Assembly (NCBI GenBank): GCA_026936335.1
Contig: JAPMXV010000036.1
Coordinates: forward strand, 186,001-250,000
DNA from: Mantamonas sphyraenae STR306
Lineage: Eukaryota; Protista; CRuMs
Direction: 5' to 3'
Length of the DNA: 64,000 nucleotides
Position numbers and translations under genes: made by a program
Shown: positions 36,257-42,900 of the stretch, in pieces
How the letters are laid out: every line of letters starts with the position of its first letter
How positions within the stretch are numbered: the stretch's first letter is position 1
Notes under the pieces: model-generated
Seen by the model: the letters and a program-made list of their open reading frames with translations, nothing else
Told to the model about the DNA's origin: nothing
The model's database searches: none

Positions 36257-38167
36257 TCACCAGGATGAGTCGCTGTGCGAGGATCCCGATCGTCGAAGAT
36301 CGCCTGGACGTGGGCGCAAGTCATCCAGATCCAACACCGTTCGCTCAATGGCAGGCACAGCCTTCTCAGGCGTGGCTTCCTTGGTCCATCCAACGAGTTC
36401 GACGCCGGGTCGTGTCGTGGCAAAGTGTTCAAAGTCTTCGTCGGGAATGGCGACGTGGTACACAACGAGCTGCTCCAGCGCTGGGCACCCCAGGTACAAG
36501 TACTGGAATGCCTCGACATCCAGAGCCTTGTTGCAAGTGAGGTCCAAGCGGCGGAGGTTGTGCATGGCTGCGATGGGTTTGAAGAGGGCAATGGCAGGGG
36601 AGGTGTTGTGTCGCGCGGCCAATTCGCGTTCCAACGCACCTGGGGCGTCAATTTGCATGAGTTGCAACTCTTGCAATTGGCCTGCCACAGGGCCATGGTG
36701 GAGTCTGCGCAGGGAAAAGGCATCCACAGCCGTGTTGTTCAAGGAGAGGCTGATCAGCGCGTCGCCGTGGTCGGCCACAGCCATCAAGCTGCTGCGCACG
36801 TCGTTGACATCAGACATGCCATCCAGAGCCAAGTGAGCCAATCCACCGGCGTGTAACAACACACTCGACACACCCTCGGCTGTGATGCCGTGACACTCGG
36901 CCAACGAGAGCCATTTCAGGGTTCGCAGCGCCGATTTGGACGACTGACGCAATCCCGCGTCGGTGACGTGTGTGCGTGTCAGGTCCAGGTGAGTGATGGC
37001 ACGTGAATTGTCTCCCAGAGCAAGCAGCACGCGGTCATCCGCACCGGTGTCGGTCAAGTCCAGATGGGTCAAGTGGGGGCTCAGAAGCACCAACGTGCAC
37101 ACCCCGACGGGACTCATGTCCTCGCAGCGACGCAACACAAGTCGTTGCAACGGGGAATCCACAGCAGGCACCGCAAGGTACTCCACACCGTGGTGCACCG
37201 CCGTCCCCTGAGTGGCCGCTCGAGACAAAAACGCGTGCACGTCTTGCCTGTGTCGCCTGTACAATTCCCGCTCGGCTGTTTGTGCACCGCTGCCCGCATG
37301 ACTGGCCACACTTTCCAACACACTCATGTCCAGGTCCTGGTGCAGCACACTGCCCAGCGGATCGTCCGACTCCAACAATGCGTCTTCATCGCGTGTCAGG
37401 AACCGTTCCGAGTACTCACGCATCATCTTTTGCATGTGAGCCTCCTCTCGAAGCGCTTCCTCGTCCAAATCCTCCCTGGCATACTCCTCTCCCAATGAAT
37501 GAGAGTACTTCAGCAACAGTCTGGGCGACGTGAGGCCCGTCAGCGTGGTACTGCGTTCCTCCTCTTGAATCTCCTCCTCAGTGTCCACAGTCAGTGTCCT
37601 AGCTTCGTGTGCCACCTCCAGGGCCGCCGCAAAGTTGCGCACAAATTCGTCGCTGGCTGGCGTGCCGCTGAGATCCAGCTCCTGCACAAAGCCCGCCCGC
37701 AGGGTCAACAGCCTGCCCAATTCGTCCACATCCACCGTCAGTATGTGTGTGCGGTACATCCAGCCCACATCCAGCTTCCTCCACAGCTCTGCCTTGTACA
37801 CGGCGTCGAAACACAGCGTGCTCACTCGCGCCAACGCCGTTCGCTCCAAAACGTTCAGGAATCCGGCCACACGGCACACGTCGTCGACCCCGAGGTCGGC
37901 AAATGTGCACGGCGACACGTACACGTCCTCCTTCCGTGCCTCTTCCACCTGTGGGCCTGTCCCACCACTGTCTGCTTCTTCTCCTTCTTGCCATCGTTGC
38001 GCTTCTTCGTCGTCGGCCGCCTGCATAGCTGCCGCCAACGCGTCGCCCGTGCCACCCCGCTTGTGCTTGGCCATCAGCGTCTGTTTGAGCTTGAAGATGC
38101 GTCTGTATTTCCTAGCAAAGGCCACCAGATCTTCTGGAACCGGCCCTTCATTGTGATTCTGACTCAT
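36257..38167 (-). CDS. F-box / leucine-rich-repeat (FBXL-type) protein
   Basis: F-box TFADLGVDDVCRVAGFLNVLERTALARVSTLCFDAVYKAELWRKLD, followed by Cys-containing LRRs (LTHLDLTDT, LKWLSLAECHGITAEG, LRRLDLTCNKALD). Start at 38167 or 38074. Confidence 0.8.
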   Translation of the reverse strand: MSQNHNEGPVPEDLVAFARKYRRIFKLKQTLMAKHKRGGTGDALAAAMQAADDEEAQRWQEGEEADSGGTGPQVEEARKEDVYVSPCTFADLGVDDVCRVAGFLNVLERTALARVSTLCFDAVYKAELWRKLDVGWMYRTHILTVDVDELGRLLTLRAGFVQELDLSGTPASDEFVRNFAAALEVAHEARTLTVDTEEEIQEEERSTTLTGLTSPRLLLKYSHSLGEEYAREDLDEEALREEAHMQKMMREYSERFLTRDEDALLESDDPLGSVLHQDLDMSVLESVASHAGSGAQTAERELYRRHRQDVHAFLSRAATQGTAVHHGVEYLAVPAVDSPLQRLVLRRCEDMSPVGVCTLVLLSPHLTHLDLTDTGADDRVLLALGDNSRAITHLDLTRTHVTDAGLRQSSKSALRTLKWLSLAECHGITAEGVSSVLLHAGGLAHLALDGMSDVNDVRSSLMAVADHGDALISLSLNNTAVDAFSLRRLHHGPVAGQLQELQLMQIDAPGALERELAARHNTSPAIALFKPIAAMHNLRRLDLTCNKALDVEAFQYLYLGCPALEQLVVYHVAIPDEDFEHFATTRPGVELVGWTKEATPEKAVPAIERTVLDLDDLRPRPGDLRRSGSSHSDSSW

Positions 38168-41100
38168 TGTGGTCGTTCGTCGTCGTCGTCGTCGTCGTCG
38201 TCCTCCAGCGACTCTGCACTTTCTTCTTCGCTGCTGCTTGCACTGCTGGACGTCCCACTTGTGCTGCTCCCACTGCTGCTGGAACCGCTGGTGCTGCTTC
38301 CACTGGTACGCGTGGTGGTGCTGCTTGTTGTCGTCCCAGCCGCCTGTTGGCTGAGATCGCGTGGCACCAAACCCACGTTCACGGTGCGGTTGCCGTACAA
38401 AATGCAGCCACGTCGTTCGCTGTCCACATTCAGCAGCGAGCTCACAGTCTGGTGGAAGTTGTCGATGCTGTCCATGTCGGCCAGCGCCACCAGGTTGCAC
38501 TTGAGGTACGCCAGCAGCAGCGACTGCGCAGTTGGCAGCATGGCAAGCGTCTGCGGCGGCGGGAAAGGTTGTCGGATGAAAATGGTGTGTTGAGCCTCGG
38601 CGTTGCTGGCCTCCGGGGCGTGCTCCATGAACATCGGCACCAAGGAGAGCTTGCGGCCCACGATCCATGTGTGGCACCGCCTGGGACGCACAAGCGTGTT
38701 GACAGCCTCTGCAATATCCTTGTTCTGCTCAAAGAAACACACCCATTGTGTGTCGAAGCTCGTCATGTCCAGGTCAAGGAGGTTGTCCGTAAACAGGGGT
38801 CGCAGCACATCGCGATCAAACCCGCTCGCATGCTCCGTCACGTAGCTGTCGATATACACGGGCAGACAGCCCACCTGGTCCATCATCGCGTTGCTGAATG
38901 CGCCAAACGTCTTGTCCAGCAGTGACTCGTGGTCATCCACAACCACACGTCCCACAAGCAGCACGTCGGCTTCCGTGCGGTATGGCTTCACCAGCACGCA
39001 CTCGCTGGCGTCCTCGTCCAGCTCAAATGTCCACACGCCATCCCTGTGCGTGCATTTGACCGGCAGCTGATTGCACACCACAATCAGACGCATGCGTGCG
39101 TCGATCGACGAGAGCAAACGGCTGTGCACAGACTTGCCGTGCAGCTGTGACCTGTGTGACCCTGGCGACGCCTCCTCCACGTCCATGCTCTGCTTGCTGG
39201 TGGACACCGTCACGGCCGTGCTCCTCGTAGTGCGCACGGGCTCGCCATCCAGTCCCATCCCTTCCTCGACATTATTCGTGCTGCTGCTTGCTTTGCTGTG
39301 CGATGTGCCCACGTGCAAGTTGCCGTTGCTGGGCGACCTCTGCTCCGTGTTTCCCTGTTCCTGCGTGCTTGCTTGCCGGTGCTCACTCTCCTCCAACTGT
39401 AGCCTGAGCCTGCGCTGCAGATCTGCGATCTGCGCCATCATCGCCTCCTTGGCATATGTGTCCTTGATGAATCCAATAAACATGCGTTCCCCATTGACGT
39501 CGATTTCCGTGACGTGCAGCTCGATGTGGAACAGATCGCCGTTCTTGCGTTTGGCAACTAGCCTGCGCGTGCGCCCAATCACACGTCGCTTCGCTCGTTC
39601 GCTGTCGTGCGACAGGTAATGGGCCACAAACCGCTGGTGCATGGCCGCCAGACTGTCTTCCATCAGCACCGCAATTGGTTGCCCGATCACCTCGTCCACG
39701 TCGTACCCAAACATCTCGCCGGCATTCGAGTTGAACGCCTGGATTGTCCCTCGCGTTGTCATGACAATCACTGCATCCGGTGACGTGTCCATCACCTCAT
39801 CCAGCGTCGATGTGGCCACCGACGATGATGTGGATGTCACTGAAGCCTGCGACGGTGACCCTCCACGCGAGTTTGACGAGTACCCCCTACCGCTGTCCGG
39901 TTCCACACGCGCACGCTTGCTGTGGTGACCCTGCTGTTCCTCATCCTCATTCTCCAAATGACCATCGATAATGTCCCCGTCGATGTCGTCTGTCCCCTGC
40001 CGCTGTCGCTTGCGTCCATGCGTCTCGTCGCCTTCACCTCCCGCCGAGGTTGCGTTTTGTACACCCGTGGAGCCTCTGCGAGCTCGCCCTCCAATCTTTG
40101 CCTTTCCACCACTGCTGCTGCTGCTACTGCTGCTGCTTGTCGCCTGGCTGCGCAGTTTCCGTGGGGTTTGGTAGCGGTACGTGGTGTCGTGGATGACGCC
40201 AATGAAGAAGCGAGTGTCCACAGACTTGAACTCTTCCACCACCAGTTCCATGTAGAACTTTTGGCCATCGCGTCGTTTGGCCATCAGGGTGCGCGACTTG
40301 CCAATGACTCTGCGTGTTGCTGTTTCGCCCGAACGCAGGTAGCGGTTGACGTAGCCCACATGTTTGCCCGCCAAATGGTCGTCCATGAGCACTTCCACGC
40401 GTTTGCCCACAATCTCTTCTGCCGTCCAGCCAAACAGCTTCTGGGCGGCGGCATTGAAGGCCCGGATCACCGACGTGGCATCCATGATGACCGATGCACT
40501 TTCGCTGTCGTTGCACATGGTGCGCAGCTTTTGGAGCACGACGTCGTCGTTGAGCTCCTCAAGTGAGCTGTGGTGATCCGTGCTGGTGTCGGAGTCGCTG
40601 TACTGGCGCAGTTCACGTGTCAGGTTGACGATGGCGTTGTCGTGTGGCGAGTCGGACATAAACGAGAGGGACACTCCCGTGTTCTGGCTGTCGGTGGACA
40701 GTGGTGGACCACTGGACGGAGAGTCGGGACGCGACGTTGAGCTGCTGGAGCGCGTTGATCGGTCACTTCTGTGGGCTCTCGACCCCAGCTTGGCTTTCAA
40801 CCGAGCGATTTCCTGCGATTGGGCTTCCACGAGCTGCGCCATGGTGTCGATGCGCGACTTGTCCTGGATTACTCTGTGTGTGGGTGTGCGGTGAGTGTGT
40901 GCACGGGCGGTATTGTGGGAGGCGGACACGGAAAGAAGGTCGGCTTGAGTTTTCCACCGAATCCCGCCAAGACGTATTTTCCCTCCGGCGACCGCTGGCA
41001 CCCATGAAGCAACAAGGCGTGCGTGGTATTCACCTACCCGAGATACTGGTGAATTGGCTCTCCATCTGCATCCTGCATAACCGTCTCGCTGACATGCTGC

Positions 41101-41635
41101 AGTGCGGGAGGCATTTGGGGAGCGAGTGAGCGCGGAGCTGGTGAGCATGATCGATGTCTTTCCCCAGATCCGCATCCTTTTTGCCGCTCTTCACGTGCAG
41201 GCCATGTTTTGCACTTACCAGAGACATGCGGAATACCTGGCCGTCCTTGCGCAGGCCGTTGAGCAGACGCGTGCGACCAATGACCTGCAATCACGTGTGT
41301 CAGCGGGCAAAAGAAAGAAAAAGCACAAGGACGCGCAGTCCGCCCGATGTTGCGACGCATCGGCGATTGCCTCCCGATGCGTCTCTCCCACTTACCCGTT
41401 TCGATGCATACTTGCCGCTCTCGACAAAGCGTCGCAGGTACTCGTCGTGGTGTTTGGCGTCGGGCTGGGGCATGAGAAGGGAGATGCTCTGGCCAATGAC
41501 TTCGCTCGCCTTCCAGCCGAAAATGGCCTCGGCAGCCGGGTTGAAATGCGTGATGCGGCCATTGTCACGGATGACCACCAACGCTTCGTTGCTTAGCTCC
41601 ATCAGCGTGGTTGCAAACGTGTCCGTGCCTTCCAT
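38164..41635 (-). CDS. Triple FixL-type (heme) PAS sensor fused to a degenerate trehalose-6-phosphate synthase (GT20) N-terminal domain
   Basis: Exons 41635-41396, 41284-41219, 41096-41038 and 40873-38164 join in frame. Three PAS repeats follow FN.AA..FG....VIG....LM......H..Y..R..VIG..R....R(K/R)DG..F..L.V.E. GT20-like motifs: RLIVVCNQLPV, TWI, IFIRQPFP..LP, NRTVNVGLVP. Confidence 0.82.
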
Positions 41636-41760
41636 GGCTGCGCGCGCGTTGGTATTTCAGTGTGTGTCAGGTCGCATCTGGGTGGGAATTGTGCATGTGA
41701 GTGGTGGGTTGGGTTTTGGGGTGTGGGGGAGGGAATGACACGAGGAAACACGTGTGCGTT

Positions 41761-42900
41761 TTAATCGGAGGTGCAGGCAAAGCAGCACATGAGGCAGACG
41801 GCGACGACGGTCAAGATGAACAGGGGCACAAAGACCAGGGTCCACGGGATGACCACGAGGGAGGTCAGCTTGAATACAAGCAGCAGCTCGAATATCATGA
41901 TTGGCAGCACACCGAAGCAAAACACAAAGGCAAGAAAGGCGGCGCTCTCACGGTCGTTGGAGGAGTCGGAGGCGGAGAAACCGAGTTGGGTGGCGGAGAA
42001 GCAGGTGCAGCAGGCCACCACGTGGACAAAGAGCATGGGCAGACCCACCCAGAGCCAGCCCTGGTCGGATTCCAGTACAGTCAGACCCCATTCCAGCTTG
42101 GCCACAAGCAGCACGGAGGACATGACCAAACCCACCCACAGATTGCGCGGCACCACGTTGAGGAACGTGATGTGTGCGCTCTTGTAGTCCTGCGAGGCCA
42201 TGCAAGGTGGACGGGTGCGGGATGGCAGAATGGCGGTGCGAGTGGCCAGAGGGTCACATCGGTGTGTGAGAGTGTGACAGAGTGAGCAGGTGCGAAATGT
42301 GTGTTTGAAAATGTGCGTGCGCGCTGTGAAGGGGCCGTGTGTTGGGGTTGGGGTTGGGACGTACGAGGGAGAATTGGTGTTGGGCTGTGTTGGGAAAGTC
42401 GAGGTCGACGGGGAGGAGCATGCACATGGCGAACCAGAACCAGGCCATGACAAAGGTGAGGGAGAGAGAGGTGCTGGAGGCTGGAGCGGCCTCTCGCTGA
42501 TCGAGATAAATAGAGAGGAGGACGGTGAAGGTGAGGTTGAAGAGGCCCGAAATGGCGAGCCAACAGCTTGAAGCAAACGACGGTTCCCTTTCTGGGCGAT
42601 TGGTGAGCCGACCCAGTCCCTGGGTGAGCTCTGTGGCACAGAGAGCCGGCAGGGCAAGCACCAGGGCCAGAAAGACGGTAATGTACACGGGAACCATGAC
42701 CAAGACCCAAGGTGCGTCCAGGGTGCCCTCCAGCTTGACCGCAATGAGCGGGCAAATGACAGTGGCAGAGACCTGTGCCGGGAGAAGGTTGGGGAGAATG
42801 AATGTGTGTGTGTGAGAGGCGAAGGTTGATGCCGTTTCGACAAAAGATAGGGACGTACTGCCAGTGAACAACAGGTGCACACCTGGGCCACCGATCGCAT
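41761..42900 (-). CDS. TMEM185/TMEM203-like multi-pass membrane protein
   Basis: Introns 42882-42773 and 42364-42190. Repeated LIAVKLEG..PWVLVMVP, LLVAKLE..WLWVGLP and LLLVFKL..PWTLVFVPLF units. Start uncertain (42900, 42987 or further upstream). Confidence 0.7.
   Translation of the reverse strand: MRSVAQVCTCCSLAVRPYLLSKRHQPSPLTHTHSFSPTFSRHRSLPLSFARSLRSSWRAPWTHLGSWSWFPCTLPSFWPWCLPCRLSVPQSSPRDWVGSPIAQKGNRRLLQAVGSPFRASSTSPSPSSSLFISISERPLQPPAPLSPSPLSWPGSGSPCACSSPSTSTFPTQPNTNSPSYVPTPTPTHGPFTARTHIFKHTFRTCSLCHTLTHRCDPLATRTAILPSRTRPPCMASQDYKSAHITFLNVVPRNLWVGLVMSSVLLVAKLEWGLTVLESDQGWLWVGLPMLFVHVVACCTCFSATQLGFSASDSSNDRESAAFLAFVFCFGVLPIMIFELLLVFKLTSLVVIPWTLVFVPLFILTVVAVCLMCCFACTSD

What the first reader, a model, noticed from the sequence alone, without database searches (positions are those of the whole stretch)
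38164..41635. Triple heme-PAS gas sensor fused to a catalytically degenerate trehalose-6-phosphate synthase half-domain, with no kinase or cyclase output
Seen: three PAS domains, each keeping the residues that align by eye to FixL's proximal heme His (HHDEY, KHVGY, MHQRF) and distal O2-binding Arg (VIGRTR, VIGKSR, VIGRTR). Short coiled coils follow PAS1 and PAS3. The C-terminal domain (~39093-38360) tracks the N-terminal Rossmann fold of GT20/TPS: RLIVVCNQLPV ~ RLIIVANRLPV, and IFIRQPFPP..LP ~ FFLHIPFPS..LP. However, WVHDYHL has become WIVGRKL and the UDP-glucose-binding C-domain is absent. Known: FixL-type PAS domains bind heme/O2 and usually drive a kinase or phosphodiesterase; the TPS N-domain binds glucose-6-phosphate. 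Inference: a eukaryotic integrator of O2/redox and sugar-phosphate status that signals through protein interaction. I do not know this architecture from elsewhere.
Basis: partly seen in the sequence, partly recalled or inferred. Interest (0 to 1): 0.8.

Follow-up and report, generated by a model that had tools for sequence, protein, structure and literature searches.

The report
Triple FixL-like PAS, dead half-TPS protein
A compact, GC-rich eukaryote carries an intact four-exon gene for a protein with three oxygen-sensor-like (FixL-type, probably heme-binding) PAS domains and, instead of an enzyme output, the front half of a trehalose-6-phosphate synthase with every substrate-contacting residue replaced; no relative with this layout was found anywhere.

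Summary
On the minus strand, 41635-38164, four exons joined by three canonical GT..AG introns give an in-frame 1024-codon gene. All three PAS domains hit FixL heme domains first in the PDB, then DosP. All three keep the proximal His, the Arg220 equivalent and the distal hydrophobic residues. A PAS2 model superposes on BjFixL (TM 0.87-0.89).

The C-terminal domain matches Pfam GT20 positions 2-243 of 473 (64.8 bits). Its model is confident (pLDDT 88) and matches the N-lobe of fungal Tps1 (TM 0.75-0.77). No C-lobe, kinase, cyclase or phosphodiesterase is present.

Every N-lobe residue that contacts glucose-6-phosphate or the donor is replaced (Arg to Gln, GGL lost, Tyr to Ala, Trp to Arg, HDYH to VGRK, His to Arg). 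The domain also sits on a branch about nine times the family median. Canonical sugar-phosphate sensing is therefore unlikely.

My best reading is a soluble heme-PAS gas or redox sensor whose pseudo-TPS lobe acts as a docking module. Heme binding, expression and partners are untested. No orthologue turned up in 1.84 billion protein representatives or in metagenome contigs, and no RNA run was listed. I rate it a new variant of a known kind, of moderate interest.

The parts
38164..41635 (-). Whole gene, ATG 41635 to stop TGA 38166-38164; 1024 codons after splicing
   Evidence: the reading frame is kept across three GT..AG introns
41396..41635 (-). Exon 1 (80 aa): N-terminal two thirds of PAS1, including the proximal-His candidate H63 (codon 41449-41447)
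   Evidence: Pfam PAS 50.4 bits; BjFixL 1dp6 E 2e-13 with His on His
41285..41395 (-). Intron 1, 111 nt, GTAAGT..TTGCAG
41219..41284 (-). Exon 2 (22 aa): PAS1 FG loop and G-beta strand, VIGRTR..RKDGQVFRMSL
   Evidence: aligns to RmFixL 88-109
41097..41218 (-). Intron 2, 122 nt, GTAAGT..CTGCAG
41038..41096 (-). Exon 3 (19 codons plus 2 nt): PAS1 H-beta and I-beta strands
40874..41037 (-). Intron 3, 164 nt, GTAGGT..CACAG
38164..40873 (-). Exon 4 (902 aa plus stop)
40789..40851 (-). Amphipathic helix after PAS1 (IDTMAQLVEAQSQEIARLKAK), a possible short coiled coil
   Evidence: best heptad score in the protein, borderline against shuffles
40141..40533 (-). PAS2, FixL-type; His293 (codon 40362-40360), VIGKSR at 40308-40291
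   Evidence: RmFixL 1d06 E 5e-20; AF2 pLDDT 84.5; Foldseek top 32 hits all heme-PAS, TMt 0.87-0.89 to BjFixL
39829..40140 (-). Low-complexity linker (poly-Ser, Gly-rich) with basic clusters GRKRQRQ and SKRARVEP
   Evidence: no domain hit
39421..39828 (-). PAS3, FixL-type, plus the start of a C-terminal helix; His534 (codon 39639-39637), VIGRTR at 39582-39565
   Evidence: RmFixL 1d06 E 2.4e-20; Pfam PAS
38362..39090 (-). Degenerate N-lobe of a GT20 trehalose-6-phosphate synthase (pseudo-enzyme half-domain)
   Evidence: Pfam PF00982 64.8 bits, HMM 2-243/473; PDB Tps1 E 1e-14; AF2 pLDDT 88.4; Foldseek Tps1 TMq 0.75-0.77; residue losses
38167..38361 (-). Ser/Thr-rich stretch and acidic tail ending in eight Asp
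38164..38167 (-). ATGA: the stop TGA of this gene overlaps the ATG of the next co-oriented gene (F-box/LRR-like, 636 aa)

Best explanation
This is a real, intact eukaryotic gene for a soluble 1024-aa signalling protein. Its three PAS domains belong to the FixL/DosP lineage and most likely each bind heme b through the F-alpha histidine (H63, H293, H534). The conserved G-beta arginine is placed to hold bound O2, so the protein probably senses O2, or NO, CO or redox state. These steps are inferred from homology, not shown.

There is no catalytic output. The C-terminal module is the N-terminal Rossmann lobe of a trehalose-6-phosphate synthase. It keeps the fold-defining residues but has lost every substrate-contacting residue and the whole donor-binding lobe. 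It therefore cannot make trehalose-6-phosphate and is unlikely to bind glucose-6-phosphate in the canonical way.

The most likely mechanism, also inferred, is that ligand-dependent changes in PAS and helix association alter how the pseudo-TPS lobe is presented to a partner protein. Long disordered linkers tether that lobe to the sensors. The partner might be the organism's own TPS/TPP enzymes, by analogy with the catalytically dead Tsl1/Tps3/TslA subunits of fungi.
For: Gene integrity: canonical splice sites, frame kept, GC3 of 0.72-0.78 in all four folded domains, against 0.58-0.59 overall GC in the introns.

PAS lineage: for all three domains the first 13-14 PDB sequence hits are FixL, then DosP. 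The best NCBIfam model is the FixL equivalog, 163.9 bits over its heme-PAS region. The PAS2 model's top 32 Foldseek hits are all heme-PAS. The nearest metagenomic relatives (40-44% identity) are bacterial PAS-HisKA-HATPase kinases.

Pocket residues: His200, Arg220, Ile215 (Val here), Leu236 and Ile238 (Val here) have equivalents in all three domains; Arg206 is kept in PAS1 and PAS2. The F-alpha His is the main determinant of heme binding in this PAS cluster (PMC10468136).

GT20 half: establish the fold. Loss of functional residues is shown against 41 TPS sequences and the residue roles in PMC6879718. No C-lobe lies nearby.

Precedent for dead TPS-like domains acting through protein contacts: PMC5405227.
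Against: There is no expression evidence; no RNA run was listed. No orthologue was found, so purifying selection cannot be measured. The GT20 half lies on a branch of 8.7 changes per site against a family median of 0.95, which would also fit decay. About 40% of sequences in the FixL/DosP PAS cluster lack the invariant His, so cluster membership alone would not show heme binding. PAS3 has His in place of Arg206. The long disordered linkers argue against rigid helical signal transmission to the C-terminal lobe. No partner has been identified or tested.
Confidence: 0.5

Rival explanations
1. One reading: the GT20 half still binds glucose-6-phosphate or trehalose-6-phosphate, so the protein integrates O2/redox state with sugar-phosphate status.
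For: The N-lobe fold is retained with high model confidence. Several replacements in the former cleft are basic (Arg117, Arg166, Lys167, Arg193 in the 277-aa numbering) and could in principle bind an anion.
Against: All four conserved N-lobe acceptor contacts are replaced, the Gly loop is lost, and the fifth contact (Arg324) sits in the missing C-lobe. In M. thermoresistibile OtsA, G6P gave no binding heat without the donor, and the donor binds mainly the absent lobe.
Confidence: 0.1
2. The PAS domains are heme-free. They bind another small ligand or only mediate oligomerisation, as in eukaryotic PASK, whose PAS domains derive from the same cluster.
For: PASK PAS domains of three protists fall in the FixL/DosP cluster, and human PASK PAS-A has lost the heme residue (PMC10468136). 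Heme binding has not been measured here.
Against: All three domains keep the His, the Arg220 equivalent and the distal hydrophobic residues. Heme-PAS structures outrank all non-heme PAS structures by several orders of E-value.
Confidence: 0.2
3. The GT20 half is a decaying remnant of a chimeric gene and has no function of its own. The protein works as a PAS-only scaffold, or the gene is young or poorly expressed.
For: The branch is extreme (8.7 against a median of 0.95). All functional residues are lost. There is no orthologue anywhere and no expression data.
Against: The 245-codon region is open, with a codon-position GC pattern (0.62/0.37/0.78) like the PAS domains. Fold-defining residues are kept: Pro97, Gly110, Leu116, Pro118, Phe120, Trp136, Asn143, Trp162, Pro195 and Pro197. 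The AF2 pLDDT is 88.
Confidence: 0.15
4. The stop is not the true end. A frameshift, either an assembly error in the GAC repeat or recoding, fuses this protein to the downstream F-box/LRR-like ORF. That would give a PAS-regulated SCF substrate adaptor, analogous to plant ZTL/FKF1.
For: The stop TGA overlaps the downstream ATG (ATGA), and the downstream frame stays open about 170 codons upstream of that ATG. A (GAC)8 repeat lies 15 nt before the stop.
Against: The upstream extension of the F-box frame is Gln/Arg/His-rich out-of-frame sequence. The F-box-like segment lies about 90 residues after its own ATG, as expected for an independent protein. First-reader notes on the same window report very close or overlapping genes elsewhere (unchecked). 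No splice site pair that would join the frames is evident.
Confidence: 0.05

Closest known systems
FixL heme-PAS oxygen sensor (Bradyrhizobium and Sinorhizobium; PDB 1DRM, 1D06, 8JS5)
   Same: The PAS fold, 30-38% identity, the proximal His, the Arg220 equivalent, the distal Leu and Ile/Val, and a C-terminal helix that aligns with the start of the FixL linker.
   Different: There is no HisKA/HATPase kinase. The heme-type PAS is triplicated. The host is a eukaryote and the gene has introns. The score against the FixL equivalog model is 163.9 bits, far below its 850-bit cut-off.
E. coli DosP/EcDOS heme-PAS phosphodiesterase
   Same: The second-best group of PDB matches for all three PAS domains.
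   Different: There are no GGDEF or EAL domains. The position of the DosP distal Met95, by my own mapping from memory, carries Arg or Lys here.
Fungal Tsl1/Tps3/TslA regulatory subunits and the Tps2 N-terminal domain (catalytically dead TPS-like domains)
   Same: A GT20-type domain that has lost its catalytic residues. Precedent for action through protein contacts (PMC5405227). The pseudo-GT20 domain of C. albicans Tps2 (5dxf) is a structural hit at rank 23.
   Different: Those proteins keep both GT-B lobes and a TPP-like domain. Here only the N-lobe remains, and it is fused to sensor domains.
PAS kinase (PASK/Psk1/2)
   Same: A eukaryotic multi-PAS protein whose PAS domains trace to the FixL/DosP cluster (PMC10468136). 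From my own knowledge, it has a functional link to glucose partitioning.
   Different: PASK has a Ser/Thr kinase output and human PAS-A lacks the heme His. This protein has no kinase and keeps the His in all three domains.
Canonical OtsA/Tps1 (GT20)
   Same: The N-lobe Rossmann fold, TMq 0.75-0.77.
   Different: The C-lobe is absent and all substrate contacts are replaced. The branch is about nine times the family median.

Membership tests
FixL/DosP-type heme-binding PAS (cluster 3 of PMC10468136) | PAS fold | tested here: met
   Pfam PAS, PAS_9 and PAS_4 over cut-off; PAS2 model pLDDT 84.5, TMt 0.87-0.89 to BjFixL
FixL/DosP-type heme-binding PAS (cluster 3 of PMC10468136) | Histidine on the F-alpha helix (BjFixL His200) as proximal heme ligand | tested here: met
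   H63, H293 and H534 align to the FixL His in HMMER alignments
FixL/DosP-type heme-binding PAS (cluster 3 of PMC10468136) | G-beta arginine (BjFixL Arg220 / DosP Arg97) and distal hydrophobic residues | tested here: met
   The last Arg of VIGRTR, VIGKSR and VIGRTR aligns to the Arg of FixL IIGIGR/IIGIDR; Leu236 is kept; Ile215 and Ile238 are Val
FixL/DosP-type heme-binding PAS (cluster 3 of PMC10468136) | Heme b actually bound; gas-dependent spectra | not testable with these tools
   Needs purified protein
FixL sensor histidine kinase (NCBIfam NF041777) | HisKA and HATPase_c output; full-length score over the 850-bit cut-off | tested here: not met
   163.9 bits, PAS region only; no HisKA or HATPase_c hit
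GT20 trehalose-6-phosphate synthase (OtsA/Tps1) | N-terminal Rossmann lobe | tested here: met
   PF00982 64.8 bits, HMM 2-243; Foldseek Tps1 E 2e-17
GT20 trehalose-6-phosphate synthase (OtsA/Tps1) | C-terminal donor-binding lobe (Arg286, Lys291, Asp385, Glu393 of MtrOtsA) | tested here: not met
   The HMM match ends at 243/473 and is followed by a low-complexity tail and the stop. A six-frame scan of the genome finds no further GT20 match on this contig.
GT20 trehalose-6-phosphate synthase (OtsA/Tps1) | Acceptor and donor contacts of the N-lobe (Arg18, Gly39, Tyr90, Asp144, Gln146, His168 of MtrOtsA) | tested here: not met
   Gln28, Asp/Ala in place of GG, Ala108, Gly165, Lys167 and Arg193 in alignment A1; residue roles from PMC6879718. 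The mapping to MtrOtsA and E. coli numbers goes through conserved motifs, not a direct alignment to those chains.
Tsl1/Tps3-type regulatory pseudo-TPS subunits | TPS-like domain lacking catalytic residues | tested here: met
Tsl1/Tps3-type regulatory pseudo-TPS subunits | Complete two-lobe TPS-like domain plus a TPP-like domain | tested here: not met
   Only the N-lobe is present and there is no PF02358 hit
Tsl1/Tps3-type regulatory pseudo-TPS subunits | Physical association with the TPS/TPP complex | not tested
   The genome's intact TPS domains are split by introns. I did not build joined models, so no complex prediction was run.
PAS kinase (PASK) | C-terminal Ser/Thr protein kinase domain | tested here: not met
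   No Pkinase hit

The most novel reading that the evidence does not exclude
This would be a eukaryotic heme-based O2 or NO sensor with no enzymatic output. It would act by presenting a pseudo-TPS half-lobe to the organism's trehalose synthase/phosphatase machinery or to another partner, coupling oxygen availability to trehalose or carbon storage. That would be the first FixL-type heme-PAS with a pseudo-enzyme docking output.
Probability: 0.12. Interest if true: 0.75.

Novelty: new variant of a known kind. Interest (0 to 1): 0.5.

Why it matters
FixL-type heme-PAS sensors are textbook bacterial O2 sensors wired to kinases or cyclic-di-GMP enzymes. Bona fide heme-PAS gas sensors in eukaryotes are few, and for some (CLOCK/NPAS2, PER2) heme binding is disputed.

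If heme binding is confirmed, this gene would show that a eukaryote has kept the complete FixL pocket in three tandem copies. It would also show that the catalytic output has been replaced by half of a dead metabolic enzyme. That would be a clean case of a pseudo-enzyme fragment recruited as a signalling output, and a possible link between oxygen and trehalose metabolism.

It rests on a single gene in one genome, with no expression or conservation data, so its weight is limited for now.

Tried and rejected
1. Orthologue and architecture searches.
- The word-index search with exon 4 found nothing.
- The same search with the GT20 region found one weak TPS-TPP hit.
- With PAS2 it found only bacterial multi-PAS kinases.
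- An exhaustive HMMER search of 1.84 billion representatives with the GT20 half gave a best identity of 29-30%. The ten best hits scanned were ordinary TPS. None of the 151 hit proteins contains a FixL-like PAS.
- A metagenome scan with the GT20 half gave no relative. The scan with PAS2 gave bacterial FixL-like kinases with no GT20.
- The ESM Atlas returned only PAS or TPS clusters.

2. Expression. No RNA run was listed, so read laying could not be used.

3. Organism. I guessed Plasmodiophora brassicae from the genome size (25 Mb) and GC (59%). Two diagnostic primers taken from PMC8309272 are absent from the genome, so the guess is dropped and the organism stays unidentified.

4. Literature. 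No paper with a PAS plus GT20/TPS fusion was found.

5. Origin of the half-domain. The tree was a quick one; the careful search did not finish. It is uninformative because of the 8.7 branch, and shows no affinity to the genome's own TPS modules.

6. Own-genome paralogues. Only two other PF00989 hits exist, both in tandem PAS-histidine kinases on contig 20.

7. Complex prediction was not used. The only intact TPS domains of this genome are interrupted by introns, and joined models were not to be built.

8. The spliced protein was never joined, in tools or scripts. Each exon was searched by reference.
Full report
**Anatomy**

The region lies in a 25.06-Mb, 78-contig eukaryotic assembly of about 59% GC. 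On the minus strand an ATG at 41635 opens an 80-codon exon that ends at 41396 before GTAAGT. A 66-nt exon follows (41284-41219), then a 59-nt exon (41096-41038), then a 2710-nt exon (40873-38164). The introns are 111, 122 and 164 nt and run GTAAGT..CAG, GTAAGT..CAG and GTAGGT..CAG.

The exons add up to 3075 nt, or 1024 codons plus TGA. The splice junctions restore a continuous PAS domain..GKYASKR|VIGRTR..RMSL|HVSETV..HQYLG|VIQDKS. The upstream co-oriented gene ends at 41761. The stop overlaps the ATG of the next co-oriented ORF, so the gene is tightly bounded.

Codon-position GC is 0.57-0.62 / 0.37-0.41 / 0.72-0.78 in PAS1 exon 1, PAS2, PAS3 and the C-terminal domain alike. Every search used single exons by reference, and no search or fold of the spliced whole was made.

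**PAS domains**

Pfam finds PAS in exon 1 and twice in exon 4. Against all PDB sequences, PAS2 and PAS3 hit the heme domains of S. meliloti and B. japonicum FixL first, with E from 5e-20 to 5e-13. The heme-PAS of DosP/EcDOS follows at 1e-8 to 1e-11, and non-heme PAS proteins come only at 1e-5 or worse. Exon 1 of PAS1 behaves the same way, and exon 2 aligns to RmFixL 88-109. The best NCBIfam model is the rhizobial FixL equivalog, matched over its heme-PAS region. The score is 163.9 bits, which is not a membership score because the cut-off is 850.

In the printed alignments the His of HHDEY, KHVGY and MHQRF falls on the proximal His. The last Arg of VIGRTR, VIGKSR and VIGRTR falls on the FixL Arg that holds O2, which is BjFixL Arg220 by my numbering of the printed sequence. 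The Ile215, Leu236 and Ile238 positions carry Val, Leu and Val. The Arg206 position is Arg in PAS1 and PAS2 and His in PAS3.

An AlphaFold model of PAS2 (pLDDT 84.5) has heme-PAS structures as its first 32 Foldseek hits: FixL, DosP and FG214. TM-scores normalised to BjFixL are 0.87-0.89. Xing et al. (PMC10468136) place FixL and DosP in one PAS cluster. They identify the F-alpha His as the main determinant of heme binding, and they note that PASK PAS domains of three protists fall in the same cluster. Eukaryotic members are therefore known.

The nearest environmental relatives of PAS2 (40-44% identity) are bacterial PAS-HisKA-HATPase_c kinases of 399-511 aa on high-GC contigs. Heme binding is thus a well-founded but untested inference. 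I put it at about 0.7 for at least one domain.

**C-terminal domain**

Pfam Glyco_transf_20 matches at 64.8 bits (cut-off 32.5), but only over HMM positions 2-243 of 473. Fungal Tps1 chains are the best PDB sequence hits at about 1e-14. The model built from an alignment with 41 TPS sequences is confident (pLDDT 88.4, pTM 0.87). It matches the N-lobe of C. albicans, A. fumigatus and M. oryzae Tps1 with TMq 0.73-0.77, and TPS clusters of the ESM Atlas with TM 0.81-0.84.

After HMM position 243 come a Ser/Thr-rich stretch, EEESAESLE, eight Asp and the stop. A six-frame scan of the genome with PF00982 finds no other GT20 piece on this contig.

In alignment A1 the window keeps the positions that look structural: Pro97, Gly110, Leu116, Pro118, Phe120, Trp136, Asn143, Trp162, Leu168, Pro172, Phe191, Pro195 and Pro197. 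It replaces the functional ones:

| Family motif | Window sequence | Key change |
|---|---|---|
| NRLP | NQLP | Arg to Gln |
| S-GGL | EDAS | Gly loop lost |
| YNGF | ASGF | Tyr to Ala |
| LWPLFH | LRPLFT | Trp to Arg, His to Thr |
| WVHDYHL | WIVGRKL | HDYH to VGRK |
| FFLHxPFP | IFIRQPFP | His to Arg |

PMC6879718 names exactly these positions as the contacts. Arg18, Tyr90, Asp144 and Gln146, plus C-lobe Arg324, bind G6P. His168 and the absolutely conserved Gly39 contact the donor. That paper also reports no G6P binding heat without the donor. My mapping of window residues onto those numbers goes through the conserved motifs, not through a direct alignment to that chain.

The domain is therefore catalytically dead, and its canonical sugar-phosphate site is dismantled. 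On a quick maximum-likelihood tree its terminal branch is 8.74 changes per site against a median of 0.95. It groups with nothing, not even the genome's own TPS modules.

**Distribution**

No orthologue or similar architecture was found by any route:
- Word-index searches.
- An exhaustive HMMER search of 1.84 billion representatives, with best identity 29-30%. The ten best hits scanned are ordinary TPS or TPS-TPP, two with PX or PDZ inserts.
- A PAS screen of all 151 GT20 hits.
- Metagenome contigs.
- The literature.

In the same genome, PF00989 detects only this gene's three domains and two tandem PAS-histidine kinases on contig 20. The genome's real TPS genes sit on contig 68. One of them carries two GT20 modules in tandem, and an earlier first-reader note describes its second module as degenerate.

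**How it probably works**

Shown here:
- An intact multi-exon ORF.
- Three FixL-lineage PAS domains with the heme pocket preserved.
- A folded-looking but functionally stripped TPS N-lobe.
- No enzymatic output domain.
- Long low-complexity linkers between the modules.

Inferred: heme-dependent sensing of O2, NO, CO or redox state. Ligand-dependent PAS and helix association would then change the availability of the pseudo-TPS lobe for a partner. The fungal precedent is Tsl1, Tps3 and TslA, which are TPS-like proteins without catalytic residues. They regulate the trehalose complex, and TslA binds a chitin synthase (PMC5405227). Those proteins keep both lobes and a TPP-like domain, so this protein is not a member of that family.

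The helices after PAS1 and PAS3 may be remnants of the FixL signalling helix. Only the first reaches a borderline heptad score.

**Rivals**

- Heme-free PAS domains.
- A decaying remnant lobe.
- A hidden fusion to the downstream F-box/LRR-like ORF through a frameshift at the ATGA overlap.

None of these can be excluded without RNA and protein data, and no RNA run was listed for this stretch.

**Verdict**

The functional story is only half supported. I rate it a new variant of a known kind (a heme-PAS sensor with a pseudo-enzyme output) and of moderate interest. It has clear and inexpensive biochemical tests.

Noticed in passing
window 38164-38167 and 36257-38167 (minus strand): The stop TGA of the PAS gene overlaps the ATG (ATGA) of a 636-aa co-oriented ORF with LRR_6 and FBD-type LRR hits and an F-box-like segment about 90 residues in. 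That ORF's frame stays open about 170 codons upstream of its ATG, inside the PAS gene.
   Followed up: partly
window 39829-40140 (minus strand): The linker between PAS2 and PAS3 has a poly-Ser run and basic clusters (GRKRQRQ, SKRARVEP) that fit the monopartite NLS pattern K-[KR]-x-[KR]. The protein also ends in an acidic tail with eight Asp. This hints at nuclear localisation or an autoinhibitory tail; neither was tested.
   Followed up: no
window 41636-41761: Only 126 bp separate the stop of the upstream co-oriented membrane-protein ORF (ends 41761) from the ATG at 41635. Gene spacing is very tight on both sides.
   Followed up: no
L007:1149-4343 and L007:4380-7550 (G000 contig 20, 50500-58500): Two tandem paralogous ORFs of about 1060 aa carry PAS, HisKA and HATPase_c. 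They are eukaryotic sensor histidine kinases and the only other PF00989 hits in the genome.
   Followed up: partly
L071 (G000 contig 68, 66500-74500) and L070 (contig 68, 259000-266000): The genome's real TPS genes are here. One chain carries two GT20 modules in tandem, the first split by an intron near HMM position 131-135. A second gene is split near HMM position 147/148. The tandem second module has a long branch of 3.2.
   Followed up: partly
whole genome G000: Size (25.06 Mb), GC (59%) and compactness suggested Plasmodiophora brassicae. The published diagnostic primers TC1F and PBTZS-3 have no match in the assembly, so the organism remains unidentified.
   Followed up: yes
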